A stretch of 64,000 nt of DNA from IMGVR_UViG_3300032245_001860:186001-250000; one strand, 5' to 3'. Positions 20,737 through 60,409 are shown, numbered from the stretch's first letter. The notes: a model not told the origin generated them from the sequence alone. Numbers and translations: made by a program.

Positions 20737-20748
20737 TATAAAAGATTT
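20737..20748 (+). promoter_or_regulatory. Putative -10 box giving a leaderless dnaJ mRNA
   Basis: TATAAA 20737-20742, 6-nt spacer, ATG 20749; no SD. Confidence 0.55.
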
Positions 20749-21738
20749 ATGTCAGATCCTTATTCAATTTTAGGAGTTGCTGCTAATGCAACCAATGATG
20801 AAGTAAAATCAGCATACAGAAAATTAGCTAAAAAGTATCATCCTGATGTAAACAAAGATCCTGATGCAGAGTCTAAGTTCAAGGAAGTCACTAAGGCATA
20901 TGAGGATATTTTAAATCCACCTCCAGCTCCTCCTCCGCAAGATCATTTTGGTGGTTTCAATCCTTGGGATTTTTTTAGACAGCAATCTCATCATATGTCT
21001 CTAAATACCCCAGTATCAATATCAGTCTCTCTAACAATGAAAGAAGCATTTATTGATGTGACAAAAACCATTAACTTTACAAGAAGTATTTTTTGTAAAA
21101 CTTGTGATGGCAAAGGTGGTATTGGACCAGTTAATGCTTGTGCTAAATGTATGGGTACGGGACAAAATAAAATCACAATGCAACAAGGGTTTTATTTTTT
21201 TGAACAAATCTTAGGTCCATGTCAAGTTTGTTCAGGAAGAGGATCAGTTTTTACAAATCCATGTGGCTCTTGTAGTAGTTCTGGATATAAAAATAAAGAC
21301 GAATCTTTTACAATGAAGATTCCAAAAGGGTCTTTATTTAAAACTACAATTATTAATGACTTAGGCAATCATATAGACAGAGCTCAAAAACCTGGAGCTT
21401 TGATTGTAGAAATTAATTTGCTACAAGAGCCTGGTATCAATGTTGATCGAGAATATAATATTTATATTGACAAACTTATAGATCCTATTGCAGCACTGAC
21501 AGGATTTGAAACAAAATTATTACACCCAGATGGTTCAAGTTTAAATTTAAAGTTAAAAAATAAAATATCTAATGGCCATATACATAAAGTTTCAAAAAGA
21601 GGATTACCAAAATCTGAAAATGATTTTGGGGATTTGAACATTAGATTTTTGTATAATATACCTGAAGATTTATCTGATGAAGAAATAAAGATATTGGAAT
21701 CTTATGTAGAATCCAGAAGGAAGAGAGAATTATTATGA
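20749..21738 (+). CDS. dnaJ: DnaJ (Hsp40) co-chaperone
   Basis: J-domain with HPD, four CxxCxGxG-type zinc-finger repeats, DnaJ C-terminal domain. Confidence 0.93.
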
Positions 21739-21944
21739 GCATGATTAAGAGAGCTAATGGCCAAGTTGAAAGTTTTACTGATGAGCAAGGCAAAGAAGTT
21801 AAGGCTGACAATCTTGTTTGGGCCGACGAAAAAGAAACCAAGCCGGAAATTAAAGACGCACTTGATATTCCAGTTGTAGAAGATTTGACTCTTGATGTGA
21901 ATGCGCCTGATGATGATGATACAGTAATAGCTAAGGATTGCTAA
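21735..21944 (+). CDS. Small acidic hypothetical protein
   Basis: ATGA overlap with dnaJ; co-directional. Confidence 0.6.
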
Positions 21945-21945
21945 A

Positions 21946-22386
21946 GTGCAAAATGTCTTGAATTTTTTATTACATTCTTTTGACGGCCTGATACTTTACA
22001 TTTTATTATTTGTTGTAGGTTCGTTTGTTTTATATCATTTAGCAAGACTAAAGAGCCAAAGAGCTTATTTATTTACTACAATTAAGATTATTTCATCAGT
22101 TCTTGGAAATAAATTTGGATCAAAAGCTTCAGCTTTACTTGAGATTTTTGTTGATGGATTAGGTAAAATTCAAGATGGTGATTTTTCTAATGATGATGTA
22201 GTAGATTGGTTTTTGAGATATGTAAGACTTTCTGCCCAGCAAAAAGGCATATCTTTGACTGATGAAGACATTAATAATCTTCACACCTTGATATCATCAA
22301 CTGTATTTACATTTATTGGAAAAAACCCAAAGCAAATTGAACACGCAGTGAATCAATTTAACGCTTTTCAAGCAATGTCAAAATAA
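21946..22386 (+). CDS. Membrane-anchored hypothetical protein
   Basis: GTG start; N-terminal hydrophobic helix LILYILLFVVGSFVLYHL. Confidence 0.6.
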   Translation: MQNVLNFLLHSFDGLILYILLFVVGSFVLYHLARLKSQRAYLFTTIKIISSVLGNKFGSKASALLEIFVDGLGKIQDGDFSNDDVVDWFLRYVRLSAQQKGISLTDEDINNLHTLISSTVFTFIGKNPKQIEHAVNQFNAFQAMSK

Positions 22387-22406
22387 TAGTTTGACTACAG
22401 ATCGTT

Positions 22407-22435
22407 ACAATGCCCATGTCATACATGGGCATTGT
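22407..22435. terminator. Perfect 13-bp inverted repeat (terminator or operator)
   Basis: ACAATGCCCATGT-CAT-ACATGGGCATTGT, between two genes. Confidence 0.55.
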
Positions 22436-22442
22436 TAATTTA

Positions 22443-22457
22443 TGATATAATAAATCT
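22443..22457 (+). promoter_or_regulatory. Extended -10 promoter, leaderless helicase mRNA
   Basis: TG-A-TATAAT (22443-22451), 6 nt, ATG 22458; no SD. Confidence 0.6.
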
Positions 22458-24224
22458 ATGTTTTTTGTTTACGTTTACAATGACAAGTCTGTGGTATATG
22501 ATGACCAACACCCACAAGGCAAACTTGAACATATGTATCAAGAAGCTTTAAGAGTTGAACTGGCATATGATGTTCCTGATGCTGAATGGAGTGCAAAGTT
22601 CAAGCAAGGGCAATGGGATGGAAAAATCTCAATCTACAACAAACGTGAGCAATCTTTTCCAACAGGTTTGACTAATAAAGTCAAGAAATTATTTGAATTA
22701 CTCAATATTGAATTTAAGTTTGTAGACAAAAGAGAAAAACCAGAATTAAATTTTCCAGTTGATGTTAATTTTGGCGGTAAAGAATTAAGAGATTACCAAT
22801 TAAGTTCTGGTGTATTATCTAAAAAGTTTCAGAGAGGGATGTTAGCTCTTTGTACCGGAGCTGGAAAAACTATGACCTCTTGCCAAATATTCAAAGAGTT
22901 ATCAGTTGCTCCTGTTGTTTTCATTGTTCCAGCAATTGAATTATTGAAACAAACACAAAAAGAGTTTGAAAAATATTTGAGATTGAATGGGCAACCTGTG
23001 AAAGTTGGTATTGCGGGTGGTGGACTTTGTGAAATTAATTTTGAAGGCATCAATGTAATTACTTACCAAACAGCTCTTAATTCTCATAATAAAAAATATG
23101 TTGAAAGTCAAAAAAAGTTAGTTGATGATAATGTTGAAGGTTCAAAAACTTCAGCTCAACTTCAAAGTGAGTATGAAGCCGCTCATTCTTCTTACAAAAA
23201 AGCTGTTGATAAAGCTAATATTGCACTTAAAGATTTGCGTCAAGAATTTATCAATGCTCAAGAAAATCAACGCAAAGATGCAGAAATTATTCGTAAAAAA
23301 TATGAACGCTCTTTGAATTCAATAACTAAATTAGAACTTGCTGCATATAAAAAAGCTAAATTGGCATGGGACAATAGACAGGATGTATTGTTTCAAAAAG
23401 CACAAGTAAGAGAAGTTCTTTCACTCTGTCAAGCATTTATTGTCGATGAAGCCCATGTTGCTTCTGTTGTAATTGAAGAATTAGGCAAGTATGCTAAAAA
23501 TGCATTTTATAAACTTGGTTTGTCTGGAACGCCTTGGAGAACCGATAATCAGGAAATCAGAATTGAAGGAGCATTAGGAAGAAAAATTATTCAAGTTTCA
23601 GCTTCTGACTTAATTGAAAGAGGGTTTCTTGTTCCACCTAAAATATTCATTTGTAAGATCAATGAACAACATCATGCAAACACTTATCCTGAAATTTACA
23701 CGTTAAACATAGTAAATAATTGGGAAAGAAATTTTAGAATCAAGCAATTTGCTGAACAGTTTAAGTCAAAAAGCAGACCTACTCTTATTTTAGTAGAAAG
23801 AAGAGAGCATGGTTCTATACTTGAAAGCATGATTGAAGATGCGGTTTTTGTTCCTGGTGGCGATAAAGGTGAAGAAGATCCAACAGATGAGGAAAAGAAT
23901 TATCGTAGAAGAATGCTAAATGCTGTTGAAAACAATGAAATTATTTTGATAGCAACACAATGGGCAAATGTAGGTGTAGATGCTCCAAGAATTAGCTGTT
24001 TGATTTTAGCTGGTTCTAATCAATCTTCCGTAACAACATATCAACAAGTTGGAAGAGTGCTGAGATGTGTAGGTAAAGATATCGAGGAGTCTATTAAAAA
24101 CGGAAAGCCTGATGCAATCATTTTGGATTTTTCATCAGACCAGAAAAACTTGAAAACTCATATCAATATGAGGAAAAAAGTATATAAGAATGAAAGAGCT
24201 TGGACATTATTTGAGCTGAAATAA
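22458..24224 (+). CDS. Superfamily 2 DEAH helicase (UvsW/XPB-like) with a coiled-coil insertion
   Basis: LRDYQ Q-motif, TGAGKT, DEAH, SGT, QQVGRVLR; N-terminal WDGKI as in UvsW-like phage helicases. Confidence 0.88.
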   Translation: MFFVYVYNDKSVVYDDQHPQGKLEHMYQEALRVELAYDVPDAEWSAKFKQGQWDGKISIYNKREQSFPTGLTNKVKKLFELLNIEFKFVDKREKPELNFPVDVNFGGKELRDYQLSSGVLSKKFQRGMLALCTGAGKTMTSCQIFKELSVAPVVFIVPAIELLKQTQKEFEKYLRLNGQPVKVGIAGGGLCEINFEGINVITYQTALNSHNKKYVESQKKLVDDNVEGSKTSAQLQSEYEAAHSSYKKAVDKANIALKDLRQEFINAQENQRKDAEIIRKKYERSLNSITKLELAAYKKAKLAWDNRQDVLFQKAQVREVLSLCQAFIVDEAHVASVVIEELGKYAKNAFYKLGLSGTPWRTDNQEIRIEGALGRKIIQVSASDLIERGFLVPPKIFICKINEQHHANTYPEIYTLNIVNNWERNFRIKQFAEQFKSKSRPTLILVERREHGSILESMIEDAVFVPGGDKGEEDPTDEEKNYRRRMLNAVENNEIILIATQWANVGVDAPRISCLILAGSNQSSVTTYQQVGRVLRCVGKDIEESIKNGKPDAIILDFSSDQKNLKTHINMRKKVYKNERAWTLFELK

Positions 24225-24246
24225 ACTGCTTCATTGCAGTTTTTTT
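24223..24246 (+). terminator. Rho-independent terminator after the helicase gene
   Basis: AAACTGC-TTCATT-GCAGTTT followed by a T run. Confidence 0.6.
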
Positions 24247-24250
24247 CATT

Positions 24251-24322
24251 TTAATAATCAGCTTTAAATAATGTAACAAAAATAGTGTCGAATAACTTTT
24301 CAATATCTTTTAATATGTTCAT
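24251..24322 (-). CDS. 23-aa amphipathic peptide MNILKDIEKLFDTIFVTLFKADY (not in the ORF track)
   Basis: SD AAGGAG (24336-24331) 8 nt before ATG; own TATAAT at 24389-24384; fills the intergenic gap. Confidence 0.6.
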   Translation of the reverse strand: MNILKDIEKLFDTIFVTLFKADY

Positions 24323-24346
24323 TTTATTATCTCCTTGACAAAATTA

Positions 24347-24376
24347 AAACCGCTGATATATTACCATCAGCGGTTT
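24347..24376 (-). promoter_or_regulatory. 5' leader hairpin of the small-peptide transcript
   Basis: AAACCGCTGAT-N8-ATCAGCGGTTT, beginning about 7 nt downstream of a minus-strand TATAAT. Confidence 0.55.
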
Positions 24377-24482
24377 CACTAATATTATACATCAATAACT
24401 TTTCAAAACCCTTTTATAGAATGTTTTTGTAGATGTTTGTTGAATAATATAGTACAGCATAATTGTGCTGTGGAGGTGAGTT

Positions 24483-24842
24483 ATGTTCCACCAAACTATC
24501 GTTGGTAAGCCAAAACATTGTTTGAATAGAAATTGCAAAACTCCTTTCTTTAAGGAATCTCATTTAGGTTGGATGCCAAAGTCAGAGGTAGAAGTCTATG
24601 CAATTATGAGATGCCCAAAATGCAAGGATACATTTGCTGTTGTTCAATTAATATCTATGGCTCATGATTATAAAACTGCTCTACCAAAAGATCCAAGTCA
24701 AGTTTCTCCTTCTGGTCCAATAACAAAAAAAGAACTAACAAATTTTAAGAAAAAACTTGACAATAAAGACTCGTTAAAAAGTTTATTAGAGGGGTACAAG
24801 CCTGGAGGTTCTGTAATCTCTGAAGATGACACTGATATCTAA
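24483..24842 (+). CDS. Zinc-finger hypothetical protein
   Basis: CLNRNC ... CPKC; strong SD GGAGGTGA. Confidence 0.7.
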   Translation: MFHQTIVGKPKHCLNRNCKTPFFKESHLGWMPKSEVEVYAIMRCPKCKDTFAVVQLISMAHDYKTALPKDPSQVSPSGPITKKELTNFKKKLDNKDSLKSLLEGYKPGGSVISEDDTDI

Positions 24843-24847
24843 TCCTG

Positions 24848-24859
24848 TACAATACTTAT
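24848..24859 (+). promoter_or_regulatory. Putative -10 box, leaderless dnaK mRNA
   Basis: TACAAT 24848-24853, 6 nt, ATG 24860; no SD. Confidence 0.55.
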
Positions 24860-26572
24860 ATGAGTATTGCAGTTGGAATAGATTTAGGCAGCACATTTAG
24901 TGTAGTTTCTTATGTAAAAGCAGATGGAAGTATTGAGGTAATTCCTAATTCAGAAGGAAACCGCATTACACCATCTGTTTTTGCAATTGATAATGAATCT
25001 CAAATATTAGTTGGAGATTTAGCTGCGGACTATGAATTAACTAATCCTGATAGAGTTGTTAGATTAGTTAAGAGAAAAATGTCAGATGGATTTAATAAAA
25101 TTTATGATTTTAATAACTATGATAAATCAATAAAACTTTCCGCTTGTGAAATATCTTCTGAAATATTGAAAAAATTAAAAAAAGATACAGAAGATTACTT
25201 AGGAGAAGAAATTACTCAAGCTGTAATCACTGTTCCTGCTTATTTTAATAATAGTGAAAGAGAAGCAACAAAAGCAGCTGGAGAATTGGCAGGATTGAAA
25301 GTCCTCAGAATAATCAATGAGCCTACTGCAGCTTCATTAGCCTATGGTCTTGATAAAAATAATGACTCAACAATCTTGGTTTACGATCTTGGTGGTGGCA
25401 CTTTTGATGTTACTATACTTAGGCTATCTGATGGCTGTGATTTTCATGTTCTCTCAACAGCAGGAGACACAAAACTTGGAGGAGCAGATTTCGATTCCGC
25501 TTTAGGAAAAATTATTGAAAACAAGTTAGGTTTTGAAATTGAATCTTCTGAATTAAGATCTATTTCTGAAAAAACCAAAAAAATGTTATCTCAACTACAA
25601 ATAGCTACTGTTCGCTATGCAGGAAAGCAAGTTTCAGTTCAAAGAGAAGAATTTGAAAAAGCAATTGATTTTTTAATTATGGAAACTAAAGATTGTATAG
25701 ACCAAGCTTTATCTGATGCAAAATTGAGTGCAAATGACATCAATGAAGTAGTTTTTGTAGGTGGATCAACAAGAATCCCATATGTAGCTCAAAAAGTGCA
25801 AGAATGGCTAAATAAAAGGCCAAATAAGTCAATCAATCCAGATGAAGCTGTTTCCGTTGGTGCAGCAATTCAAGCTTCGGTTCTTTCAGGCAATTCAAAC
25901 AAAGAAGTATATTTATTAGATGTCACTCCTTTATCTTTAGGCATTGAAACTCAAGGTGGTTTTATGACTACAATGATTAAAAGAAATACTCAGGTACCGT
26001 CCGAGTTTAAGGAAGTTTTTACTACAGCTATAGATAACCAAACTGAAGTAGATGTAAAAGTTTTTCAAGGCGAAAGACCAAGAGTAGTCAATAACCATTA
26101 TTTGGGTGAATTTAAACTTGAAAATATCAAACCTGCTCCTCGTGGAATACCCAAAATTGATGTTATTTTTGATGTAGATGCAAATGGAATTGTAACTGTA
26201 AGAGCAATTGATGAAAATACAAATGAAGAAAAATCAATGGTTCTTAGTGGAGCAAAAAGTTTATCTAATGACGACATAACGAAAATGCTAATGGATGCTG
26301 AAGACAATAAAGCTAAGGATGAAAGGGATAGAACTATCAAGAAATTATCAGATTATCTTATTGATTGTAAAATTCAAATAACTCATCTTTTAAGTTCAAA
26401 TGTATTAGATAAAAACGATATCAATGAATTGCTTGATTTAAAAAAATCTATTGAAAATGATGTACATTCAGAGAATATAGAATTTTTATCTTCATTGTCA
26501 GAATCAGCTAAAGAATTATTAGAATTATTATCTGACAAAGTACATGAAGAAGCTGCTAAAATGCTGTCATGA
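24860..26572 (+). CDS. dnaK: DnaK (Hsp70) chaperone
   Basis: [55 protein letters not shown]. Confidence 0.95.
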
Positions 26573-26970
26573 ACAAACTTGATAAAATAGGAGCGGTAGC
26601 TTCCATGATTTGTGCTTTCCATTGTACAATCATGCCTTTTATAATTGTTGTATTTCCAGTTCTTAGTTTATCTCTGTTTGTATCAGAAACATTTGAATGG
26701 GCTTTTCTTTCAGCCTCTTTATTATTGGGAATCACAAGTTTATGTTTTGGATATAAAAAACATAAATCATTTAAAGCTTTTCCATTACTTGCATCTGGCC
26801 TTGCATTGATTGTTATTGGAAGAATTATGCACCAACACACAATTCATCAGAAAGAAATGCATATTGATTTATATAATATTATTTTGTTTAGTGGTGGGAT
26901 TCTTGTAGCGTTATCTCATAAAATAAATAGTCTTCTGTGTAATACTTGCACGAAATGTAACATAAAATGA
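26569..26970 (+). CDS. MerC-family membrane protein (metal uptake)
   Basis: LDKIGAVASMICAFHC...P signature; about 4 TM helices; His-rich loop; C-terminal CxxCxxC. Confidence 0.78.
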   Translation: MNKLDKIGAVASMICAFHCTIMPFIIVVFPVLSLSLFVSETFEWAFLSASLLLGITSLCFGYKKHKSFKAFPLLASGLALIVIGRIMHQHTIHQKEMHIDLYNIILFSGGILVALSHKINSLLCNTCTKCNIK

Positions 26971-29605: not shown

Positions 29606-29907
29606 TACATATACCTTGCATCTTCAACTTGAAAAAAACCTTTCCAAGATGCAGTTACATTTCCATATGTAAACCAAGAATATTTCCATTTTCCTACTAT
29701 ATCAACATCAAGATCAATATAAAATATTCCTGTACCTTCTGTTTGAACTGGAGGTGTACTTGTGATGCCATAACTGCTATACTCTGTTTCTCCAGGTTTT
29801 TCAAGATCAAATTGAATAGATTGAGGATTTGTCAATGTGCCATCAATATCTCTTACTCTTGCTTTAATTCTAATTGTTTGATTTGTGTAAATAACGTCAG
29901 CTTTCAT
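29605..29907 (-). CDS. Small Ig-like structural protein
   Basis: 'GTGIFYIDLD...GKWKYSW' Ig-type C-terminus; coupled to neighbours by TAATG overlaps. Confidence 0.55.
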   Translation of the reverse strand: MKADVIYTNQTIRIKARVRDIDGTLTNPQSIQFDLEKPGETEYSSYGITSTPPVQTEGTGIFYIDLDVDIVGKWKYSWFTYGNVTASWKGFFQVEDARYM

Positions 29908-32900
29908 TAACTTGTGCTCCTAAAATTTAAATCACTTTCAATAGTTTGTACTTTAGTAAGTGTACTATCAATACCCTCTAACACTTGTATGTCTACTTCA
30001 ATTGTTTGAAGTTTCTCATACCAACCAACAAGAGGTACATGTATAATTGTAAGTTCACTTTCAATGGTTTGTGGTTTTTCGAACCATGAGTGTATATGAC
30101 CTGGGAATTGAGGTAGTTTTAATCTGTGTCTACCAAGAGTTTGTTTTGTTCTTATTCCAAATGGTCTTATATAACTTTGAGTATATAATTTATGTAAACT
30201 GAAAGTAATTGAGTTGTAGAGATTTACAAAAACTGTATCTGTTGGATTCAGAGGAGTGTCAAATACAACTTTACCTTCTAATGGATAGAGAGTATATCCA
30301 GTAGAAAGTACATTTGAGTTTACTATTACTTTGACATTTTGGAAAACATTGATGTCCCAGTAATATACATTTGTACCATCTGCGGTTAAGAATATTTCAG
30401 TAGATGATCCGAAACCATTAAGTTTGTAAAGTTTAAGGTCAAATTCTCCATTGCTTGCTCTTTCTTGAGACAATATACTCCAAGGAACAATTCTATCTCT
30501 TCTTCGTAATTCATGATATCCAATAGTTTCAAGAGATTTTATTGAGTATGGATTTATTCTTGAAATAGCTTTAAGTTCATGGAATCCTAATTTTTCTTCA
30601 GTTGATATTGGATATGGTTTGATGTTCGTTATTGTTGTGAGCTTGTGTAATCCAAGTTTTTCATCAGTAGAAATATTGAATGGTAAAATTCTGAAATCAA
30701 CTTTTTGTAAAATATGGAATCCAGTCTTAGCTGTTTCTAATATTGTAAGTGGATATATCTTGTAATTATTACTTAAGGTATGTAAGCTAATGGTTTCCAG
30801 ACTTTGAATTGAGTATGGTCTTATGTTGTTGAAATAAGACAGTCTGTGTAAACCAGTTCTTTCAACGCCACTAATAGCATACGGGAATATGTTATAAACA
30901 TTTTGTAATGTATGTAGACCTAAAAGTTGCTCTGTAAGGATAGGCCTTGGTCTTATATTTACAGGTGGTATTGATAATCTATGAAGTCCAGTTTTTTCTT
31001 CGCTTGTTACGCCATAAGGTATAATAGGATATAAGTATTGCAACCTGTGATTAGAAACTCTTTCAACAGTCGTAATTGTGTTAGGTCTGATATTGACTGA
31101 TCCAGCTACAAGCCTTGGAGCACTTGGATACATATCTGCAGGAGATGGTGTAATAGGACCATAGCCAGGCATAGTAGACCAAGAACCATTGAGATAAATA
31201 TACTGACCATATCTCAATGTCATAACTCCACCAGTTGTTGAATCAAAACCAGTATAACCAAATGGATATATGAATGCTCTGGTTGTAAGTCTATGGAGTC
31301 CTAATCTTTCTTGTGTCAAGATTGGATTTGGATTAATTAATATCTGATATTGAAGAGTATGTAATCCCAAAAATTCAGAAGTTCTTATGCCATATGGATT
31401 TATAGACTTAATATTTGTAAGAGTATGTATTCCAAGCAATTCTGTGCTTAAGATTGGATATGGTATTATTTGTAATCTTGTTGTAAGCCTATGGAATCCA
31501 GTTTTTTCAAGCCCAAATACAGTAAATGGATAGATATTTTTATTGCTTCTTAGAGTATGTAAGCCTAATGTTTCAAGAGTTCTTATTCCGTATGGTATTA
31601 TTGATTTTATATTAGTTAATGTATGTAAACCAAGATTCTCAGTAGCACTAATACCATATGGAATAATTTGCAATCTTCCAGCAAGCGTATGTAATCCAGT
31701 TTTTTCTGTAGTCAAAATACCATAAGGAATTATAGATTTTGCACTTGTCAGGGTATGTCTTCCAAGAATTTCTAAAGTTCTTACAGCATATGGGTAAATA
31801 TAATTGTTGCTTCTTAATGTATGTAATCCAGTGTTTTGTGTTGAAAGTATTGCATATGGATTTATCGTGATTAATCCAACCAATCTGTGGAAACCTGTTC
31901 TTTCAACTGAAATTATTGGATAAGGTCTAATATTTACCCCAGCAAGAGATAAAAGATGTAGCCCAGTTTTCTCTAAAGTTCTTACACCATATGGGTAAAT
32001 GTAACTATTACTTCTCAATGTATGGAAGCCAGTTTTTTCTACACTAAATATTGTGTATGGGTATATTGATGAAGTTGTTCTTAAAGTATGGAGACCAGTT
32101 TTTTCTATGCCTAATATTCCATAAGGACGTATATTGCGTAAGCTCGTAAGTGTGTGAAGGCCAGTATTTTGATTTGAAACAATTCCATATGGATTAATAT
32201 TTTTTCTGGTCTGTAGAGTATGTAGACCTAATGTTTCAAGTGAAGTGATTCTGTAAGGAATTATATTATTCCCTCCAGAGTTCAAAATATGTAGGCCTAA
32301 ATTTTCTAAAGTTAATATTCTATAAGGAATAATATTTTTGTTTGAAGTGAGTGTATGTAAACCCAATCTTTCAATAGTATTAATTCCATAAGGAGTAATG
32401 TTTCTAAAGCTTGAAAGTCTATGTCTTCCAATAATTTCTAATGAAATAATTGTGTAAGGGTAAATATTTTTGTTGCTTCTTAGTGTGTGATATCCTGTAA
32501 ATTCATTAGTTCTTACACCATAAGGAATTATGTTATTTCTTGCACTTAGAGTATGAAGTCCATAATTTTCAGTTGTTATGATTCCATAAGGAATTATTGA
32601 TCTTGATGAAGTTAGTCTATGGAAGCCTAATCTTTCAACTGTAAGTATAGGTTTCGGTAATATATTGACTGCACCAGCACTAAGTCTCGTCAATGAGCTA
32701 AACGATTCAGTTGTTCTAATACCAAAAGGCCTGATTTGAGCCAGAGTTGATAATCTGTGTAAGCCTGTAAATTCAGTTGATAAAATACTGTAAGGAAGTA
32801 TATTTCTTGTAGCTGAAAGTCTATGGAAACCGTTTATTGCATTTGATAAAATTCCAAATGGATTGATATTTCTTGATCCTGGTACTAATCTATGGAGGCC

Positions 32901-50975: not shown

Positions 50976-52343
50976 TTATTTTCTTTGAGCTTCAGGACGA
51001 TTGAAAATATCACTTGCTACAGCTGCCAATTCTGATCTTTCAACCTTAGTTAAGGTAACAGAAGCGACAAGCGCGTTTTTCTTTCCACCAGAGATAGCAT
51101 GAGCTAAACCATTAGACTTTGCATCCAAATATGGATTCTCCACTTGTGAAAGGTCACCAAGCAAAATTACCTTGGAATCTTTTCCACAGCGCTCAATTAC
51201 CATTCTTGCTTCTCTTGCTGTGATATTTTCAGCTTCATCAAGTATTATTATGGATCTTGGGATAGAACGACCTTGAATAAAAGCCATAGCTTCCACTTCA
51301 ATAATACCTTCACGGCACATTTCCTCAAATCTATTATTTGTGGATAATGTTTTAGCTCCTAAAATTTGGTCAATATTGTCTTTGATTGGCCCTAACCATG
51401 CAGCAATCTTTTCAAATTTATCACCTGGTAATGCTCCAATATCTTTTCCACCAACTGGAATAAGAGGCTTCATAACAACAATCTTGTCATAAATTTCTTG
51501 ATTGATCATTTGAAGAGCAGCAGCTAATGCCAAAAATGATTTACCAGTACCAGCTTTACCAGAAAGTGTTACTAAAGGTATGGTTAAATCAGTGAGAATT
51601 TCAAGAGCACATTTTTGCTCTAAGTTTTTTCCTTGAATACCAGAATAAGCTTTAATTTCTTTTGAATTTGACTTTTCTTTAAGTACTTTTAATTTTCCAT
51701 TTTTATGATACGTAGGGCACTTGCTGTCGCCATACTCAAAAATAGTAAATTCATTTGGATTTAGGTCTTTAATTTTTGCTTGAAGATCTTGTGAAAGAGA
51801 TTCAATAAGAACTTCATCAGTACTCCAAAGAGTATTCCAGTCACTTTGAGAGTCACATGAAACAAATCTAACTCCAGTGTACTCTCTGTCTTCAAGTTGA
51901 TCAGCTTTATAATTCTCTGCAACACATCCCCAGGTTATTGCACGAATTCTTAAACCAGTGTCTTTTGTAATAATGGCTACTTTTTTTCTTGGATTAGCAG
52001 CCTTAAGAGCTAAACAACATTCAATAATAGCATTATCAGAATGTACTTTAACAATATTAGGTCTTTCATTTTTTTGCAAAGGAGATTCAGTGTTATATAC
52101 AAACAATCTACCATTTTGTTCGTTTATTTTCACGCCTTTCAAAAGATCTGTAAGGGTATAGTTTTCTAAGTTTCTAAAAACTTCTCTGGCGCTCCATCCT
52201 ACGCTTTCTTTTCTGGTCTTAATGTCATCTAAGTCGTCAATCACAGCAAGTGGTACGTAGATATCATTTTCGCCAAATTTGTAGAGAGCAAGGGGATCAT
52301 GAAGTAAAACGCAAGTGTCAATGATGTAAATATGCTTTGCCAA
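50976..52343 (-). CDS. phoH: PhoH-family ATPase with N-terminal PIN domain
   Basis: YIIDTCVLLHDP (PIN), GKAGTGKS, QGRSI, DEAEN, GDLSQ, ERSELA; TTG start with GAGGAG SD. Confidence 0.9.
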   Translation of the reverse strand: MAKHIYIIDTCVLLHDPLALYKFGENDIYVPLAVIDDLDDIKTRKESVGWSAREVFRNLENYTLTDLLKGVKINEQNGRLFVYNTESPLQKNERPNIVKVHSDNAIIECCLALKAANPRKKVAIITKDTGLRIRAITWGCVAENYKADQLEDREYTGVRFVSCDSQSDWNTLWSTDEVLIESLSQDLQAKIKDLNPNEFTIFEYGDSKCPTYHKNGKLKVLKEKSNSKEIKAYSGIQGKNLEQKCALEILTDLTIPLVTLSGKAGTGKSFLALAAALQMINQEIYDKIVVMKPLIPVGGKDIGALPGDKFEKIAAWLGPIKDNIDQILGAKTLSTNNRFEEMCREGIIEVEAMAFIQGRSIPRSIIILDEAENITAREARMVIERCGKDSKVILLGDLSQVENPYLDAKSNGLAHAISGGKKNALVASVTLTKVERSELAAVASDIFNRPEAQRK

Positions 52344-52419: not shown

Positions 52420-53406
52420 TTACAAAGGTAGAGCAGGTGTCTCTTTTTCGTCTATACCAAGGTCTTCGTCATCCTTAATTCCACTTAAGAAATCTGCAGC
52501 TTTCTCATCTTCAACAACTTCAAAAGATCTCATGTTTAAGATTGATGAAAGAGATTGTTTGTCAAATTTCCTTAGCTCATTAGAATCAAGCCATTTAGTT
52601 TCTACAGCTTTTAATTCTACTTTTAGTTTCCCATCTCTAAACATTTGCAAATCATTTGAAAGTTTATTTTCAATATAGTTAATTGCTGTGTCAAGATTTG
52701 TTGTTTCAAGCAAATCAAAATCATTATAAGAAACTGCCCCAATAGATCCTTGGCTTAAAGTGTTGCCAAAAGGATCTAATATTTTTTGCTCAGTTCTAAT
52801 AAAAGAAAGACTTGTTTTAGGTATGCAGATATAAATTTTAAATGGAAGCGAATCATCAATTTGATCAGAATTTGTAAGTCTTAAAACCTCATTTTCATCA
52901 TTAACTATAGATAAAACTAATTTGTTTTTATCGTCAATCACCCAATCCCATTCATAATTATGTTCTTCTGTTTTAGGAATAAAAGCTGGAATTATTTTCA
53001 AGTCACTTTTCTTTTCGCAAATGCTTAAAAATAATTGAAATCCAATAGTATCCTCTGGTGTCCCTTTTCTGAATGTCCCAACTTTATTCCAGTCAATTGC
53101 AAAATCACTGGTAATATTAGTTATCTCAAATTCATCAAAATGTCCCTGATCATATATTCTTCTCAACAATGGATCTTCCAAAATTCTTCTCGCTCTTACA
53201 AGGTCTAAAAATGTTTCCTTAGAACCACCAAAGTCAGGATGTGCTTTTCTTGCTTGTTTGCGAAATGATTTCTCAATTAATTGTGAAATTTCTATTTTGT
53301 TTTGTCTTGTTTTACTATCAGGTAGGTTTTCTTTTGAGATTCCCAAAATAGAATAATAATCCTTATTGAAATCTATGATGTTTTTTGGATCAAATTCTTT
53401 GGACAT
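52420..53406 (-). CDS. J-domain protein with an uncharacterised C-terminal domain
   Basis: DYYSILGI...FRKQARKAHPDFGG...ILEDP..R..YD. Start reassigned to ATG 53406 (MSKEF), which is preceded by TATAAA-N6. Confidence 0.78.
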   Translation of the reverse strand: MSKEFDPKNIIDFNKDYYSILGISKENLPDSKTRQNKIEISQLIEKSFRKQARKAHPDFGGSKETFLDLVRARRILEDPLLRRIYDQGHFDEFEITNITSDFAIDWNKVGTFRKGTPEDTIGFQLFLSICEKKSDLKIIPAFIPKTEEHNYEWDWVIDDKNKLVLSIVNDENEVLRLTNSDQIDDSLPFKIYICIPKTSLSFIRTEQKILDPFGNTLSQGSIGAVSYNDFDLLETTNLDTAINYIENKLSNDLQMFRDGKLKVELKAVETKWLDSNELRKFDKQSLSSILNMRSFEVVEDEKAADFLSGIKDDEDLGIDEKETPALPL

Positions 53407-53437
53407 ATTTTTTTTATAAAGAATTAATGAGAGAATA

Positions 53438-56035: not shown

Positions 56036-56323
56036 TTATCGCATGCGGTAATTTTTGCCAAACAATTCATAGACATTTTCAGAAACAAGTTCTTGCAATG
56101 TGTCTTTTTTGGTGTAAAGTCTAATATTTGCAATTCCACCATATTTTTCTTCCATATGGTCTAATACCTTTTTGACTTTTCTATTTATTTCTAACTGTGA
56201 AGGATTATAGTTTCTTTGTTTGCTGAGTAAGTTTCTGACAGCATATTCCGCATCCATTGCAAGAACTTTTACTTCATACAATGGTCTTTGTTTATTTTCC
56301 TCTTCAGCTAATCTATACCACAT
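56036..56323 (-). CDS. Hypothetical protein (MWYRLA N-terminus)
   Basis: N-terminus parallels MWYKTA of 54331. Confidence 0.65.
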   Translation of the reverse strand: MWYRLAEEENKQRPLYEVKVLAMDAEYAVRNLLSKQRNYNPSQLEINRKVKKVLDHMEEKYGGIANIRLYTKKDTLQELVSENVYELFGKNYRMR

Positions 56324-56325
56324 AT

Positions 56326-56559
56326 TTATTTATCTATCTTTACATTTGAAACAAAAGCTTCATTAATAACAAAAGCAACATTTTGACTTGGCACGTTGAA
56401 CAAACAACTTGTCATTTTTTCATCCTTATAAATGATGTGAAAATCCTTATTAACTATCAACACTCCCTCGATAGTGCCAATAGAAACTGAAGGATTATAT
56501 GTCTGGATTTTCCACTTGCCTAATCCTCTATTTTGAGAATTATTATCAATAATAGCCAT
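56326..56559 (-). CDS. Small beta-rich hypothetical protein
   Basis: SD AGGGGA; compact spacing. Confidence 0.65.
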   Translation of the reverse strand: MAIIDNNSQNRGLGKWKIQTYNPSVSIGTIEGVLIVNKDFHIIYKDEKMTSCLFNVPSQNVAFVINEAFVSNVKIDK

Positions 56560-56585
56560 TTTTTATGTCCCCTATAGTTATATTT

Positions 56586-56614
56586 ATTTATCGCAAAATT
56601 ACCTAATTACCTTT
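56586..56614 (-). promoter_or_regulatory. Putative late promoter
   Basis: AAAGG-N17-GATAAAT. Confidence 0.45.
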
Positions 56615-56651
56615 ATCTATATCCTGAATCTTATCCTGTATAAGTAATATT

Positions 56652-57995
56652 ATGACAAAAAGAAAAAATCATATTGCTTGTGTTTTTTGTGGAGATAACG
56701 CTTCAAGACAATTGGCGGAAAAATTAGAATATTTCTCAGCAAGAAATCGTGATGTATACCTTTGTGAAAAATGCTTTCATAGTTTTTCAGCTGGTACAGT
56801 CATGGGACAATTTCAATTAAATAATAAAATTTTGTCATTGATATCTTCTGTTGATGATAATGAAACAGTAGAAAATCTGAAAAATAAGATTGCTGATTAT
56901 GCACCATCATCAAAATATACAATAAGAAATACTTCAGTTGCAAAAGCCAAGATTGCACCAGCAGAAATTTATGATTTTTTATCACATTATGTAATTGGTC
57001 AAGAAAATGCAAAGAAACGAATTTCTTTAACAGTTTATGAACATATGAGAAATGCTTACAAGTCTGAACATAATGATAAGCATAATATATTGTTTTTAGG
57101 GCCTTCTGGTAGTGGCAAAACATTAATTGTAAACAGCATAGCGAAGAAATTAGATGTTCCATATGTTGCAACTGACGCTACTTCTTTTTCACCTACAGGT
57201 TTTCAAGGAGCTGATGCAGATTCTTGTATCCATGATTTGTATTTCAAGTCAGATAACGATGTAGAAACTGCTCAAAAGGGTGTTGTATTTATAGATGAAA
57301 TTGACAAGTTATCTTCTAACAATACAGGTACAAGATTGGAAAGTTTTAACTACTCTACTCAAAGTACACTTCTCAAAATGATTGAAGGTAAAAAAGTTAA
57401 AATACCAGCTAATTTGTCTGGAGATTCACCAACACCAGTTTACATTGATACCAAGAAAATATTATTTTGTTTTGGTGGAGCATTTAATGGATTAGAAAAT
57501 ATTATTGGAAAGAAACAAGGATTTTCTGGTAAGTCTATTGGTTTTAGAAATAGCGGAGATGAAGATTATGATATCAAGATGAGAATTTATGATATGTATT
57601 CTCAAATTTCTCATGATGTTTTAGCTGAAAGTCTAATATCATTTGGCTTATCAACTGAACTTGTCGGCAGAATACAAACAATTGTACCTTTGCGTCCATT
57701 GAACAAAGAAGAACTGATGTCTTGTCTTACAAGTTTAGACGATAGCCCTATTCGCAAAAACAAATTAATGTTTGCTGAGTCTAACCTTGAACTTGATTTT
57801 ACTGAAGATTTTTATGATGAAGTGATAGATAAAGCTGTGAAGACTGGTACAGGGGTTAGAGCTTTGAATTCTATTGTAAAATCTTCTGTATCAGGTGCAG
57901 CTTTTGAACATTTAGGCTTGCAAACAGTCAAGTCAAAAAGAATCATTATCACCAAAGAATGTGTGGACGACCCTACAAAATATGAAGTTTTTTAA
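56652..57995 (+). CDS. clpX: ClpX AAA+ unfoldase (divergent)
   Basis: N-terminal CxxC...CxxC, VIGQENAK, GPSGSGKT, DEIDK, GGAF, IGF loop, ELVGR, TGVRAL; leaderless-type TATAAG-N7-ATG. Confidence 0.9.
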   Translation: MTKRKNHIACVFCGDNASRQLAEKLEYFSARNRDVYLCEKCFHSFSAGTVMGQFQLNNKILSLISSVDDNETVENLKNKIADYAPSSKYTIRNTSVAKAKIAPAEIYDFLSHYVIGQENAKKRISLTVYEHMRNAYKSEHNDKHNILFLGPSGSGKTLIVNSIAKKLDVPYVATDATSFSPTGFQGADADSCIHDLYFKSDNDVETAQKGVVFIDEIDKLSSNNTGTRLESFNYSTQSTLLKMIEGKKVKIPANLSGDSPTPVYIDTKKILFCFGGAFNGLENIIGKKQGFSGKSIGFRNSGDEDYDIKMRIYDMYSQISHDVLAESLISFGLSTELVGRIQTIVPLRPLNKEELMSCLTSLDDSPIRKNKLMFAESNLELDFTEDFYDEVIDKAVKTGTGVRALNSIVKSSVSGAAFEHLGLQTVKSKRIIITKECVDDPTKYEVF

Positions 57996-58021
57996 AGGAT
58001 TTGAATAAAGAATCTGAAAAT
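57994..58021 (+). promoter_or_regulatory. Putative late promoter
   Basis: AAAGG-N17-GAAAAT, 8 nt before ATG 58030. Confidence 0.45.
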
Positions 58022-58029
58022 ATAATAAT

Positions 58030-59112
58030 ATGCATTCTCAAATTCCTGAAAACCTAATAAAGCAAGCCTTGGAAATTCATAAAGAAAATACAAGGCTTGT
58101 TCGTTTAGCTGCCAATAGAAATTTTGCAGAATATTGGTTCACCTTACATACAAACCCAGAGGATATTAAACTTCAAACACAATTAGGAATTATGTTTGGC
58201 AGAGAATTTAAAAACTGGTGGCTTGATCTTTATGACAAGACAAAGCGGATAACGGAAATCAGGGGTCTTTTTGACAGAGATGTAATTCCTGGTGAGACAT
58301 TATTAGAATATGGAGCTGTCGAGAGACCTTATGATAATTCTTTAGGTCCTCATGGTATGGATCCAGCTGAATGGAATTTATTAGATGCAAGAATGAGACA
58401 ACTTGCACAATATTTATATGTTTGGATTTTTAGAGTTAGTATGTCTGGAGATAGAACTAACTATGTAGCATTTTTAGGAAGAAATCCATCTCCAGTGAAT
58501 TCATCATCTTCAAGTACTTCCTCTCCATCAATGAGTTCTGAACAAATATTAGAGAAAGCCATTCCTCAAAAACTTTTTGATGAATATCAAGTAAGCAAAC
58601 CAAATGATCCTTTCGTGCAATCTTATGCTTATATAAAGAGAGAGGTCACTGCATTTTTTGTAAGAGCTTTCAGTTTTTCTCAAGAGGGAAAAATAGCAAG
58701 AGGGCATTTCTTGCAACAATTGAATCCTAACAAATTTGATTTTGATGAATATTGGAATTCTCTACCAAGCAGATATGCAAATGTTCCAGAGATTGTTGCA
58801 ATTTTAGATAAATCAATAACTTTATCTCCAGCAAGCACAATTGCAGTTGAAAAGCTCAGCACTTTGGGAACAAGTGCAGGATCTCAAGAAGCAGATTCAG
58901 ATGAGATCAAGAAGACTTTGGAAGCATTAATAAATAAAATTAGAGAAATTGAAGTTGAGTCTTTACAAGAAAATTTAGTAAAAATTTATGGAAATATTGC
59001 TAAAGTTACAAGACCATTCCTTGAATTTTATAATACATCTACAAAGTTAATGGGCGGGATCGGTTCATTATCTGGTGGTCAAGATACATATTCAGGTCGA
59101 AGGAGATTTTAA
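58030..59112 (+). CDS. Hypothetical protein (possible internal virion protein)
   Basis: 360-aa helical ORF with LVRLAA near the N-terminus. Confidence 0.65.
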   Translation: MHSQIPENLIKQALEIHKENTRLVRLAANRNFAEYWFTLHTNPEDIKLQTQLGIMFGREFKNWWLDLYDKTKRITEIRGLFDRDVIPGETLLEYGAVERPYDNSLGPHGMDPAEWNLLDARMRQLAQYLYVWIFRVSMSGDRTNYVAFLGRNPSPVNSSSSSTSSPSMSSEQILEKAIPQKLFDEYQVSKPNDPFVQSYAYIKREVTAFFVRAFSFSQEGKIARGHFLQQLNPNKFDFDEYWNSLPSRYANVPEIVAILDKSITLSPASTIAVEKLSTLGTSAGSQEADSDEIKKTLEALINKIREIEVESLQENLVKIYGNIAKVTRPFLEFYNTSTKLMGGIGSLSGGQDTYSGRRRF

Positions 59113-59114
59113 TA

Positions 59115-59690
59115 ATGTCAAAATTTGTCAAGGTTGCAGCTCCAGCACCTATAAATTTTAGTAAACTTGCTTATGGAATGTTTAAAAATTTTCCACAAAT
59201 TCAAATGGCATTAAAAAAAATGTTTCCTGGGTGGAATCCATTAAATCCTTTAGATGTTACTAATAAATTTTTAGAAGCATTGCAAGATGAAGAATTCCAG
59301 GATTTAGCTATCACATTAGCTCAACAATTTATTTCACATAGGGGTCAAAAATTAAACATAAATGAAAGAGATATGTTTAAGAATTATGACTACTATTTCA
59401 AGACTAAAGGCACACCATTGCCTGGTATGTCTGCAGATTTAATGCCAACTATTGGCGCTGGTGCATATCAAGCTACCACTGCTCAAATGCCAAAAGCAGA
59501 AATAGTTCCAACAAAAACATTTTCTGCTATTATGGATGAAATCAAAACAATTACTTCAGAAGTTGGTTTTCAAACTTTAGACCCTGCAGCTAAAAGAAAA
59601 ATACTATCAAATAAAATTGGTCAATACACGAGAGAATTAGCTCCTTTTAGAGAATATCTTAAAAAGAACTTCCCGGTATTTTATCACTAA
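59115..59690 (+). CDS. Hypothetical protein (possible internal virion protein)
   Basis: N-terminus MSKFVKVAA. Confidence 0.65.
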   Translation: MSKFVKVAAPAPINFSKLAYGMFKNFPQIQMALKKMFPGWNPLNPLDVTNKFLEALQDEEFQDLAITLAQQFISHRGQKLNINERDMFKNYDYYFKTKGTPLPGMSADLMPTIGAGAYQATTAQMPKAEIVPTKTFSAIMDEIKTITSEVGFQTLDPAAKRKILSNKIGQYTRELAPFREYLKKNFPVFYH

Positions 59691-59694
59691 GATT

Positions 59695-60393
59695 ATGAAA
59701 ACAGATTACATTGCACTTGCAAAATACTTAGATAAAATTGGCAAATACAGACAGGCTGATAGTGTAGAAAAATTCCTCAGATCTGCTCAATATTCTGCTG
59801 CACCTACATATCAATCAGGTGGTCCAAGAAATCAGTTTACTGGCGGATATTTTGATGCTACTGCAATGGGAAGACAGCAAGCTGGATTTAATGCTTCTTT
59901 GCAAGAAGGAATTGGAGCTGAGTCAAATATTGAAGGCATTTTGCCATTGACTCCAGATCAAATGAAGAGTATGTCGCCTGAGGACATATTTAATTACAAT
60001 ACTGGTATAGGAGAACGGCTTGTAGCAGATGCAAATAAATATACTGGACCAAGCAAATTTCAACAAATTATTATGTTGATAAGCCAAAGATTGAATACTG
60101 CAACACCTGAGGCAAAATCACAAATTTTTCAAGGTTCTTTAGAAGAACTTATATCTTCAGAAATAAGTAATCTTGTTTTAAATGGCACACCTCAGAACTT
60201 AAATGTAAGTCTGCAATACCTGAGAAACATTGGTATTCCAGAAGTATTTAGTAGAACTGTACCTAATGCAATACAATTTGCTTTATCATCTATGATGATG
60301 GATTCAAATCCACAAACAAAACAAAGATATAATCAATTTGTAAATGATCCAACAATAAAGCAATACGCTCCAACTTTCAATCCAATCCAATAA
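59695..60393 (+). CDS. Hypothetical protein with LD..G.Y..AD N-terminal tag
   Basis: IALAKYLDKIGKYRQADSVEKFLRSAQ. Confidence 0.68.
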   Translation: MKTDYIALAKYLDKIGKYRQADSVEKFLRSAQYSAAPTYQSGGPRNQFTGGYFDATAMGRQQAGFNASLQEGIGAESNIEGILPLTPDQMKSMSPEDIFNYNTGIGERLVADANKYTGPSKFQQIIMLISQRLNTATPEAKSQIFQGSLEELISSEISNLVLNGTPQNLNVSLQYLRNIGIPEVFSRTVPNAIQFALSSMMMDSNPQTKQRYNQFVNDPTIKQYAPTFNPIQ

Positions 60394-60409
60394 TCAGTAT
60401 AAATAATTT

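What the first reader, a model, noticed from the sequence alone, without database searches (positions are those of the whole stretch)
20737..60409. Leaderless-mRNA promoter class marking the host-like genes
Seen: a -10 hexamer lies exactly 6 nt (once 7) before the ATG, with no SD, for dnaJ (TATAAA 20737), the helicase (TGnTATAAT 22443), dnaK (TACAAT 24848), the J-domain gene (TATAAA 53418-53413, minus), clpX (TATAAG 56639, 7 nt) and the macrodomain gene (TATAAA 60398). Established: this geometry puts the transcription start on the A of AUG, and leaderless mRNAs are translated by 70S ribosomes without SD pairing. Inference: the chaperone/unfoldase/helicase set is expressed early by host RNAP through a translation route that could survive host shut-off, and the host is probably rich in leaderless genes.
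Basis: partly seen in the sequence, partly recalled or inferred. Interest (0 to 1): 0.62.

Follow-up and report, generated by a model that had tools for sequence, protein, structure and literature searches.

The report
Leaderless-mRNA promoters in a freshwater jumbo phage
Six chaperone, helicase and macrodomain genes of a 316-kb freshwater phage carry a conserved promoter -10 box 6-7 bases before their ATG, so they are probably made as leaderless mRNAs; this is a genome-wide habit of the phage (about 30 genes), not a mark of host-like genes.

Summary
All six hexamers lie exactly where stated, with no Shine-Dalgarno sequence, and homology to DnaK, DnaJ and ClpX fixes three of the ATG starts. 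It is far more than chance. Among 247 ATG-initiated ORFs of the 315,852-bp genome, TAnnnT lies 6 nt before the ATG 32 times against 7.9 expected (P 1e-10). The 11,995 other ATGs show no peak.

Independent marks agree. The base at -1 is a pyrimidine in 82% of candidates against 37% elsewhere. In eleven related metagenomic phage stretches (56-90% protein identity) the hexamer is kept at 5-8 nt while the spacer sequence drifts. Where it sits 16-17 nt away, an SD appears in the new leader.

About 30 genes share the geometry, including the portal, primase, DNA methylase, lysozyme, a sigma factor and seven strong early promoters, whereas S8 peptidase, gyrase A and PhoH do not.

The six lack a -35 box and four lack T at -7, unlike the early promoters elsewhere in the genome. 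The phage also encodes three sigma factors. Early expression by unmodified host RNAP is therefore unproven. No RNA data exist and the host is unknown.

The parts
20737..20742 (+). -10 hexamer TATAAA of dnaJ, 6 nt before the ATG; directly follows the TAG stop of the upstream trypsin-like gene
   Evidence: A hexamer (TATAAA, TATAAT or TATACT) lies at 6-7 nt in 8 of 8 related genomes while the spacer sequence varies.
20749..21738 (+). dnaJ (329 aa), predicted leaderless
   Evidence: Pfam DnaJ, DnaJ_C and DnaJ_CXXCXGXG. The J domain begins at residue 3 and an in-frame stop lies 4 codons upstream.
22407..22435 (+). 13-bp-stem hairpin just upstream of the helicase promoter, terminator-like
   Evidence: Hairpins are also seen before the same promoter in L039, L042 and L043.
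22443..22451 (+). extended -10 promoter TGATATAAT of the helicase gene, 6 nt before the ATG
   Evidence: TGnTATAAT or TGnTATACT lies at 5, 6 or 8 nt in 8 of 8 genomes.
22458..24224 (+). UvsW-like helicase (588 aa), predicted leaderless
   Evidence: Pfam ResIII, UvsW_N and Helicase_C.
24848..24853 (+). -10 hexamer TACAAT of dnaK (context cTGTACAAT), 6 nt before the ATG, inside the 17-nt intergenic gap
   Evidence: TGTAyAAT lies at 6 nt in 4 genomes and at 8 nt in 3. In L041 it lies 16 nt away with an AAGAGG SD in the leader.
24860..26572 (+). dnaK (570 aa), predicted leaderless
   Evidence: Pfam HSP70, E 3e-162. The GIDLG motif starts at residue 6, as in cellular DnaK.
53413..53418 (-). -10 hexamer TATAAA of the J-domain gene, 6 nt before the ATG. 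It is part of the palindrome TTTATAAA in the 31-nt divergent intergenic region, which reads TATAAA on the + strand too.
   Evidence: TATAAA or TATAAT lies at exactly 6 nt in 5 of 5 genomes.
52420..53406 (-). J-domain protein gene (328 aa), first gene of a leftward unit, predicted leaderless
   Evidence: Pfam DnaJ domain. Relatives' gene calls start at the same ATG.
56639..56644 (+). -10 hexamer TATAAG of clpX (context cTGTATAAG), 7 nt before the ATG, in a 92-nt divergent intergenic region
   Evidence: TGTATAAT or TGTATAAG is kept in 5 of 5 genomes, at 7, 7 and 10 nt, and at 17 nt with a GGAGGG SD in L046 and L047.
56652..57995 (+). ClpX-like AAA+ unfoldase gene (447 aa), first gene of a rightward unit, predicted leaderless or with a 1-nt leader
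   Evidence: Pfam AAA_2 and AAA. N-terminal CxxC zinc-finger motif as in ClpX.
60398..60403 (+). -10 hexamer TATAAA of the macrodomain gene (TATAAATA with the next two bases), 6 nt before the ATG
   Evidence: G plus TAyAAA lies at exactly 6 nt in 5 of 5 genomes.
60410..61180 (+). macrodomain protein gene (256 aa), predicted leaderless
   Evidence: Pfam Macro, E 7.5e-5, above the curated cut-off. An in-frame stop lies 1 codon upstream.

Best explanation
The six hexamers are real promoter -10 elements. Each sits at -12 to -7 (clpX: -13 to -8) relative to the A of the start codon, so bacterial RNA polymerase should start on that A, or 1 nt before it for clpX. The mRNA would then begin with AUG and need no Shine-Dalgarno pairing.

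They belong to a genome-wide set of roughly 30 such genes in this 316-kb freshwater jumbo phage. The set includes seven of the strong early promoters and genes of every functional kind.

Shown by sequence statistics and comparison: the position, the conservation and the either/or relation with SD. Inferred: the transcription start itself, translation from a 5'-terminal AUG, and which sigma factor reads the six sites.

My leaning, about 55:45, is that the six -35-less G(-13)TAyAAw sites are used after the early phase.
For: (1) Positional peak. TAnnnT lies 6 nt before 32 of 247 ATG starts against 7.9 expected, and TAnAAT 16 against 1.6. There is no peak at 11,995 other ATGs.

(2) From the promoter side. 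Of 331 TTGnnn-16/18-TAnnnT pairs, an ATG opening at least 25 codons lies at 6 nt in 14 cases and at 4, 5, 7 and 9 nt in one case each.

(3) Internal control. Of 18 near-identical strong early promoters, 7 have an ATG at exactly 6 nt and 1 at 5 nt, all without SD. Nine have an SD-bearing leader and one drives tRNA-Leu. No intermediate spacings occur.

(4) The base at -1 is a pyrimidine in 37 of 45 candidates against 74 of 202 other genes (P 3e-8). This fits the Y(-1)R(+1) start-site preference of RNA polymerase (my own knowledge). Leadered genes instead have A at -1 and -3.

(5) ATG is the start codon in 51 of 56 candidates against 195 of 267 others (P 0.003).

(6) Comparison with 11 related stretches. 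Identity is 0.83-1.00 at -14 to -7, 0.33-0.67 at -6 to -2 and 0.89 at -1. Spacers are 5-8 nt in nearly all. Where the hexamer is 16-17 nt away (dnaK in L041, clpX in L046 and L047) an SD appears.

(7) Neighbouring SD-led genes keep their SD in the same relatives, and two non-conserved look-alikes (MerC, the 76-aa ORF) drop out.

(8) clpX and the J-domain gene head divergent units with 92-nt and 31-nt intergenic regions, so each needs a promoter there. The helicase promoter follows a terminator-like hairpin.

(9) TANNNT about 12 nt before the start codon is the published signature of bacterial leaderless genes (PMC3160421).
Against: No transcript data exist: all runs holding the phage are DNA metagenomes.

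Four of the six hexamers lack the T at -7 that housekeeping sigma factors need. Such variants show little or no histogram peak of their own.

dnaJ, dnaK and the macro gene lie 12-17 nt behind same-strand genes. They may also, or mainly, be read from upstream promoters as internal cistrons, for example the TTGACA-16-TATATT promoter at 24335-24362.

In more distant relatives the spacer is often 8 nt, so a 1-2 nt leader is as likely as none.

My gene calls are crude (longest ORF). About a quarter of the TAnnnT hits at 6 nt are expected by chance.
Confidence: 0.75

Rival explanations
1. The six sites are host sigma-70 promoters fired early by unmodified host RNA polymerase. They form a dedicated class for host-like genes, whose leaderless translation lets them escape host shut-off.
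For: The helicase site is a canonical extended -10 promoter (TGnTATAAT) in all relatives. dnaK has ATGACA 16 nt upstream in the window. No phage RNA polymerase was detected. Host-type early promoters in this genome do use the leaderless geometry.
Against: The early promoter family lies only at G000 1-27 kb and looks different. Five of the six lack a conserved -35, and the dnaK -35-like word changes in relatives. Four have A or G at -7. Three phage sigma factors are encoded, one itself behind a TGTATAAT-6-ATG site. The geometry also precedes portal, primase, methylase and lysis genes, and is absent from S8 peptidase, gyrase A and PhoH. Nothing bears on shut-off.
Confidence: 0.2
2. The hexamers are not promoters but AU-rich translation signals, for example S1-binding enhancers or re-initiation sites. 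They would help SD-less internal cistrons on polycistronic mRNAs.
For: dnaJ, dnaK and the macro gene follow same-strand genes by only 12-17 nt. About half of all genes in this genome lack both an SD and the hexamer, so SD-independent internal initiation must be common here.
Against: The motif has the specificity of a -10 box (T-12, A-11, G or TG just upstream) rather than general AU-richness. The same hexamer at the same distance occurs in full promoters with -35 and upstream AT tract. It is retained 16-17 nt upstream when a real SD is present. The -1 base is a pyrimidine, whereas leadered genes here favour A at -1 and -3. clpX and the J-domain gene head divergent units where no upstream cistron exists.
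Confidence: 0.05
3. Chance hexamers in 33% G+C DNA, or wrongly placed start codons.
For: TATAAW-like words are common: 1,100 TATAA[AT] in the genome. A generic promoter scan equals shuffles. Two look-alikes in the window (MerC at 26569, the 76-aa ORF at 62006) are not conserved.
Against: The positional peak (P about 1e-10) with no peak at non-start ATGs. Conservation of hexamer and spacing in relatives at 56-90% protein identity. Starts fixed by homology and by upstream in-frame stops.
Confidence: 0.02

Closest known systems
Bacterial leaderless ('TA-led') genes, as in Actinobacteria and Deinococcus-Thermus (Zheng et al. 2011, PMC3160421; Shell et al. 2015, PMC4633059)
   Same: A TANNNT box whose first T lies about 12 nt before the start codon, no SD, and an AUG start. 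Orthologues switch between SD-led and leaderless forms.
   Different: Here it is a phage genome of 33% G+C with a TAtAAt-type box. G at -13 occurs in half the sites and A at -7 is tolerated. The share is about 10% of genes, against about 19% in Actinobacteria and 39% in Deinococcus-Thermus.
Leaderless phage transcripts: lambda cI from PRM, and middle/late genes of Thermus phage P23-45 with -35-independent extended -10 promoters (my own recollection; the P23-45 paper was not retrievable here)
   Same: Host core RNA polymerase, a -10-only or extended -10 promoter, and a transcript that begins at the AUG.
   Different: Those hosts and their transcription starts are known experimentally; here nothing is mapped. 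This phage encodes three sigma factors, whereas P23-45 uses RNAP-binding proteins.
Jumbo phages with mapped transcription starts: phiKZ (PMC8244752) and AR9 (PMC5312081)
   Same: Genome over 200 kb with AT-rich promoters.
   Different: phiKZ showed no leaderless transcript, with 5' UTRs mostly 31-40 nt. AR9 UTRs are 26-491 nt. Both use their own multisubunit polymerases. This phage has no detectable polymerase gene and many predicted leaderless genes.
T4-type late promoters (TATAAATA read by gp55; my own knowledge)
   Same: A -35-less TATAAA(T/A)A box. The macro gene site is TATAAATA exactly, and the dnaJ and J-domain sites match 6 of 8.
   Different: T4 late mRNAs have leaders with SD. The three sigma factors here have regions 2 and 4, unlike gp55. 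dnaK, clpX and the helicase carry TAyAAT or TATAAG with TG.

Membership tests
Leaderless (TA-led) gene | TANNNT-type -10 box with its first T about 12 nt before the start codon | tested here: met
   All six sites. Genome-wide peak at exactly this position. Kept in relatives.
Leaderless (TA-led) gene | No Shine-Dalgarno sequence before the start codon | tested here: met
   No GGAG/GAGG/AGGA word in the last 20 nt at any of the six. An SD appears only in relatives where the hexamer is 16-17 nt away.
Leaderless (TA-led) gene | AUG as start codon | tested here: met
   6 of 6 sites. Class-wide 51 of 56 against 195 of 267.
Leaderless (TA-led) gene | Primary 5' end of the mRNA mapped at the start codon | not testable with these tools
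   Only DNA metagenome runs hold the phage.
Leaderless (TA-led) gene | SD-independent translation from the 5'-terminal AUG (70S route) | not testable with these tools
   Needs toeprinting or reporter assays.
Housekeeping sigma-70 promoter (-35/-10) | -35 element TTGACA-like, 16-18 nt upstream of the -10 | tested here: not met
   Best matches are 2-3 of 6 for dnaJ, helicase, clpX and macro. dnaK has ATGACA at 16 nt in the window, but it is not kept in relatives. The J-domain site was not scored at its real start.
Housekeeping sigma-70 promoter (-35/-10) | A at -11 and T at -7 of the -10 hexamer | tested here: not met
   A-11 is present in 6 of 6. T-7 is present only in helicase and dnaK. dnaJ, J-domain and macro have A and clpX has G. 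The A at -7 is conserved in relatives of the macro and J-domain sites.
Extended -10 promoter | TGn immediately before the hexamer (T-15, G-14) | tested here: met
   Met for the helicase site only, in 8 of 8 genomes. dnaK, clpX and macro carry TG one base closer (T-14, G-13), which is not the canonical register.
T4-type late promoter | TATAAATA box plus a gp55-type sigma factor | tested here: inconclusive
   The macro site matches 8 of 8 and dnaJ and J-domain 6 of 8. The three phage sigma factors have regions 2 and 4. No specific search for gp55 was made.
Bacteroidota-type promoter (TTTG / TAnnTTTG) | TAnnTTTG enriched upstream of genes | tested here: not met
   No positional enrichment. SD words peak at 6-9 nt spacing instead.

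The most novel reading that the evidence does not exclude
An abundant, uncultured clade of freshwater jumbo phages runs a -35-independent promoter class, G(-13)TAyAAw, that is read with one of its three own sigma factors. The class launches leaderless mRNAs for a proteostasis set (DnaK, DnaJ, a second J-protein, ClpX) among other genes. Within the clade the same genes flip between leaderless and short SD-bearing leaders. This would be the first jumbo phage with extensive leaderless expression and a natural series for studying how initiation modes interconvert.
Probability: 0.3. Interest if true: 0.7.

Novelty: new member of a known kind. Interest (0 to 1): 0.55.

Why it matters
Leaderless genes are known from some bacteria and a few phages. 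The two jumbo phages with mapped transcription starts have none. Here sequence evidence alone points to about a tenth of the genes of a widespread lake phage, including half of its strongest early promoters, being made without leaders.

This matters for annotation, because gene callers that expect an SD can misplace such starts. Two ClpX relatives are on record as 397-aa products covering only 89% of the query, which may be such truncated calls.

It also bears on guessing the host. The signals are canonical -35/-10 and SD, not the Bacteroidota type.

Finally, orthologues in sister phages carry either an ATG at +1 or a 10-nt leader with an SD behind the same promoter. That gives a clean natural experiment on switching between initiation modes.

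Tried and rejected
- RNA evidence: the run search found 17 holders, all DNA freshwater or aquatic metagenomes. Laying four of them gave only fragmentary contigs of related strains. The one useful item was a 1-nt deletion at 22456 in X2, matching the 5-nt helicase spacer of L039.
- Host: the genome-collection scan with the DnaK alignment used poor peptide patterns and returned only distant delta-proteobacterial and planctomycete DnaKs. Metagenome records behind my loci are not held.
- Phage protein matches: the portal is nearest Bacillus phage G (30%) and then actinobacteriophages. DnaK is about 48% identical to Firmicutes-type sequences. This is too weak to name a host.
- The 'moraphage' lineage (PMC12619734) also has DnaK and DnaJ and lives in freshwater. 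It is T4-like with a predicted Bacteroidota host. This phage has a Mu/phage-G-type portal, no glutamine synthetase and no Bacteroidota promoter signal. I do not equate them.
- SD anticorrelation (8 of 56 against 117 of 267) is largely forced by geometry and is not counted as evidence.
- Unsupervised two-class clustering of upstream regions recovered a -10-like class of 28%, but its per-gene posteriors were noisy, so I used explicit patterns.
- The positional test repeated on six distant loci (93 ORFs) was underpowered: 8 against 3.4 at 6 nt.
- Generic promoter scans equal shuffles.
- No phage S21 or IF3 was found that might bias initiation.
- No complex prediction or structure job was needed.


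Full report
**What the window is.** The window is bases 186,001-250,000 of a single 315,852-bp virus record. G+C is 33%. The window holds giant ORFs of 2832, 2708, 1951 and 1735 aa. No isolated phage is close at the DNA level. Only freshwater or aquatic DNA metagenomes hold the sequence. The portal is most like that of Bacillus phage G at 30% identity. No multisubunit or T7-type RNA polymerase gene was detected. Three small sigma-70-family proteins with regions 2 and 4 are encoded.

**The observation.** All six sites are exactly as described. Pfam confirms DnaJ, a UvsW-like helicase, Hsp70/DnaK, a J-domain protein, a ClpX-like AAA+ protein and a macrodomain protein.
- The starts are secure. 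In-frame stops lie 1-8 codons upstream for five genes.
- DnaK, DnaJ and ClpX begin where their cellular homologues begin.
- The J-domain ATG at 53406 lies inside a longer TTG-initiated frame, but it is the start called in relatives.
- None of the six has an SD-like word in the preceding 20 nt.

**Is it more than chance?** A hexamer in 33% G+C DNA means little by itself. A generic sigma-70 scan of the window finds no more sites than shuffles do.
- Among 247 ATG-initiated ORFs, TAnnnT lies 6 nt upstream 32 times, against a mean of 7.9 at offsets 10-60 (P 1e-10).
- TAnAAT lies there 16 times against 1.6 (P 1.5e-11), and 7 times at 7 nt (P 1e-3).
- The 11,995 ATGs that are not ORF starts show nothing.
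- Read from the promoter side, 331 TTGnnn-16/18-TAnnnT pairs are followed by an ATG opening at least 25 codons at 6 nt in 14 cases. The count at 4, 5, 7 and 9 nt is one each.

**An internal control.** G000 1-27 kb holds 18 strong, near-identical early promoters with an AT-rich upstream tract, TTGCAA and TGGTATACT.
- Seven have an ATG at exactly 6 nt and one at 5 nt, all without SD.
- Nine have a leader carrying GGAG-type SD.
- One drives tRNA-Leu, whose mature 5' end lies 7 nt after the hexamer.
- Nothing lies in between.

**Independent marks.**
- Position -1, which is not part of the pattern used for selection, is a pyrimidine in 82% of candidates against 37% of other genes (P 3e-8). All six sites have T there. 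This fits the pyrimidine(-1)/purine(+1) preference of RNA polymerase start sites (my own knowledge).
- Leadered genes in this genome instead favour A at -1 and -3.
- ATG is used by 51 of 56 candidates against 195 of 267 others (P 0.003).
- G is found at -13 in half of the sites.
- The lower SD frequency among candidates is mostly forced by geometry, so I do not count it.

**Comparative evidence.**
- A 110-kb IMG/VR relative, G001, is about 79% identical in DNA. It keeps every hexamer and every spacer length, and its substitutions fall inside the spacers.
- DnaK and ClpX homologues reveal a large clade of lake phage contigs, 56-90% identical in protein and up to 370 kb long. I fetched nine syntenic stretches from it.

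Distance from the hexamer to the ATG across genomes:

| Gene | Spacer in nt, one value per genome |
|---|---|
| dnaJ | 6, 6, 6, 6, 6, 7, 7, 7 |
| helicase | 6, 6, 5, 6, 8, 6, 6, 8 (always with TGn) |
| dnaK | 6, 6, 6, 6, 8, 8, 8; and 16 in L041 with an AAGAGG SD in the new leader |
| J-domain gene | 6 in 5 of 5 |
| macro gene | 6 in 5 of 5 |
| clpX | 7, 7, 10; and 17 with GGAGGG in L046 and L047 |

- Per-position identity over 18 comparisons is 0.83-1.00 at -14 to -7, 0.33-0.67 at -6 to -2 and 0.89 at -1.
- SD-led neighbours keep their SD in the same genomes. These are the gene before dnaK, S8 peptidase, PhoH, the tail tube gene, and the 151-aa and 77-aa ORFs.
- Two look-alikes in the window are not conserved and are probably chance: TAAAAT before the MerC gene, and TTGACA-17-TATATT before the 76-aa ORF at 62006.
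- A translational AU-rich signal would not be retained 16-17 nt upstream of a true SD. A promoter would be.

**How it most likely works.** Host core polymerase binds the -10 box and melts from A-11. It starts at the purine 7 nt (clpX: 8 nt) after the hexamer, which is the A of ATG. The transcript then begins with AUG and is translated without SD pairing.
- clpX and the J-domain gene head divergent units with 92-nt and 31-nt intergenic regions, so each needs a promoter there.
- The palindrome TTTATAAA in the 31-nt region reads TATAAA on both strands. It could also serve the divergent SD-led glucosaminidase gene 20 nt away. This is inference.
- The helicase promoter follows a 13-bp-stem hairpin.
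- dnaJ, dnaK and the macro gene sit 12-17 nt behind same-strand genes. These would be internal promoters, and read-through transcripts may also carry the genes.

The class does not mark host-like genes.
- The same geometry precedes a GH108 lysozyme, a kinase-like protein, an N6/N4 DNA methylase, a Toprim primase, PurA and a sigma-like protein. It also precedes Glf, the Mu-type portal, NlpC/P60, two DUF3431 proteins, several hypothetical proteins and small early ORFs.
- In the window, S8 peptidase, gyrase A, PhoH and the glucosaminidase start differently.
- I estimate about 30 true cases: an excess of about 24 at 6 nt and about 5 at 7 nt, plus variants. That is roughly a tenth of the 323 ORFs.

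'Early, by host RNAP' is not shown either.
- The unmistakable host-type early promoters lie elsewhere and look different.
- Five of the six sites have no conserved -35.
- Four have A or G at -7. Hexamers of that kind show little or no positional peak of their own, although the A is conserved in relatives.
- The phage has three sigma factors, one of which is itself behind a TGTATAAT-6-ATG site.

Resistance to shut-off is speculation.

**The host.** The signals in the genome are canonical: TTGACA/TATAAT promoters, and SD words peaking at 6-9 nt spacing. There is no Bacteroidota TAnnTTTG signal. The host itself could not be identified. The published freshwater 'moraphages' that carry DnaK and DnaJ are T4-like and appear to be a different lineage.

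**Comparison with the known.** TANNNT about 12 nt before the start codon is the accepted computational signature of bacterial leaderless genes (PMC3160421). Leaderless phage genes are also known: lambda cI and Thermus phage P23-45 (my recollection). The kind is therefore known. The two jumbo phages with mapped starts have no leaderless transcripts (PMC8244752; PMC5312081). New here are the setting, the extent, the G(-13)/A(-7)-tolerant -35-less flavour, and the switching between leaderless and SD-led forms among sister phages.

**Verdict.**
- Observation: confirmed and extended.
- Interpretation: partly supported.
- Mechanism: well supported by sequence statistics and comparison, but unverified by transcripts.
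- Confidence: 0.75.
- Novelty: new member of a known kind.
- Interest: 0.55.

Noticed in passing
G000:C1:5447-5567 (L011:5447-5567), outside the window: An early promoter (TTGCCA-17-TGGTATAAT) ends 7 nt before the mature 5' end of tRNA-Leu(TAA). The primary transcript would start at or 1 nt from the mature tRNA end, making it a 'leaderless' tRNA. tRNA-Lys follows directly. tRNA-Ser at 6871 starts 9 nt after another -10 box.
   Followed up: partly
window 53411-53418: The palindrome TTTATAAA in the 31-nt gap between the divergent J-domain gene and the glucosaminidase gene reads TATAAA on both strands. It lies 6 nt before the J-domain ATG and 20 nt before the SD-led glucosaminidase ATG. It may be a shared back-to-back -10 box, and it is conserved in L046 and L047.
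   Followed up: partly
G000:C1:110929-111624 (+), 114792-115355 (+), 311147-311722 (-): Three small sigma-70-family proteins (231, 187 and 191 aa) are encoded. Two have regions 2 and 4; the 187-aa one matched region 4 only in Pfam. No phage RNA polymerase gene was detected. Their promoter specificities are unknown.
   Followed up: partly
window 4836-18549, 29907-38033 and 45102-50957: Four giant ORFs (1735, 2832, 2708 and 1951 aa). Relatives' tables list no Pfam hit for their counterparts, and their sizes vary between relatives (1648 to over 3183 aa). They were not analysed here.
   Followed up: no
window 50976-52343 (-): The PIN-PhoH gene uses a TTG start behind a GAGAC(C/A) SD-like word. Both are conserved in three relatives at 56-59% ClpX identity.
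   Followed up: partly
P0133 and P0135; P0001: Two close ClpX relatives are on record as 397-aa products covering only 89% of the query, possibly truncated gene calls at an SD-less start. The window's own DnaK also lies on a 370,470-bp contig, so the true genome may exceed the 315,852-bp record (CheckV completeness 88%).
   Followed up: no
window 24335-24378: A near-consensus promoter (TTGACA-16-TGATATATT) overlaps a 14-bp-stem hairpin read on the minus strand. It lies about 120 nt upstream of the SD-led 119-aa gene that precedes dnaK.
   Followed up: no
window 26569-26970: A MerC-family membrane protein gene lies directly after dnaK. Some relatives have an RNase HII gene inserted between the two.
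   Followed up: no
window 22456: In one lake metagenome (X2) two contigs lack one base in the helicase spacer, giving the 5-nt spacer also seen in L039.
   Followed up: partly
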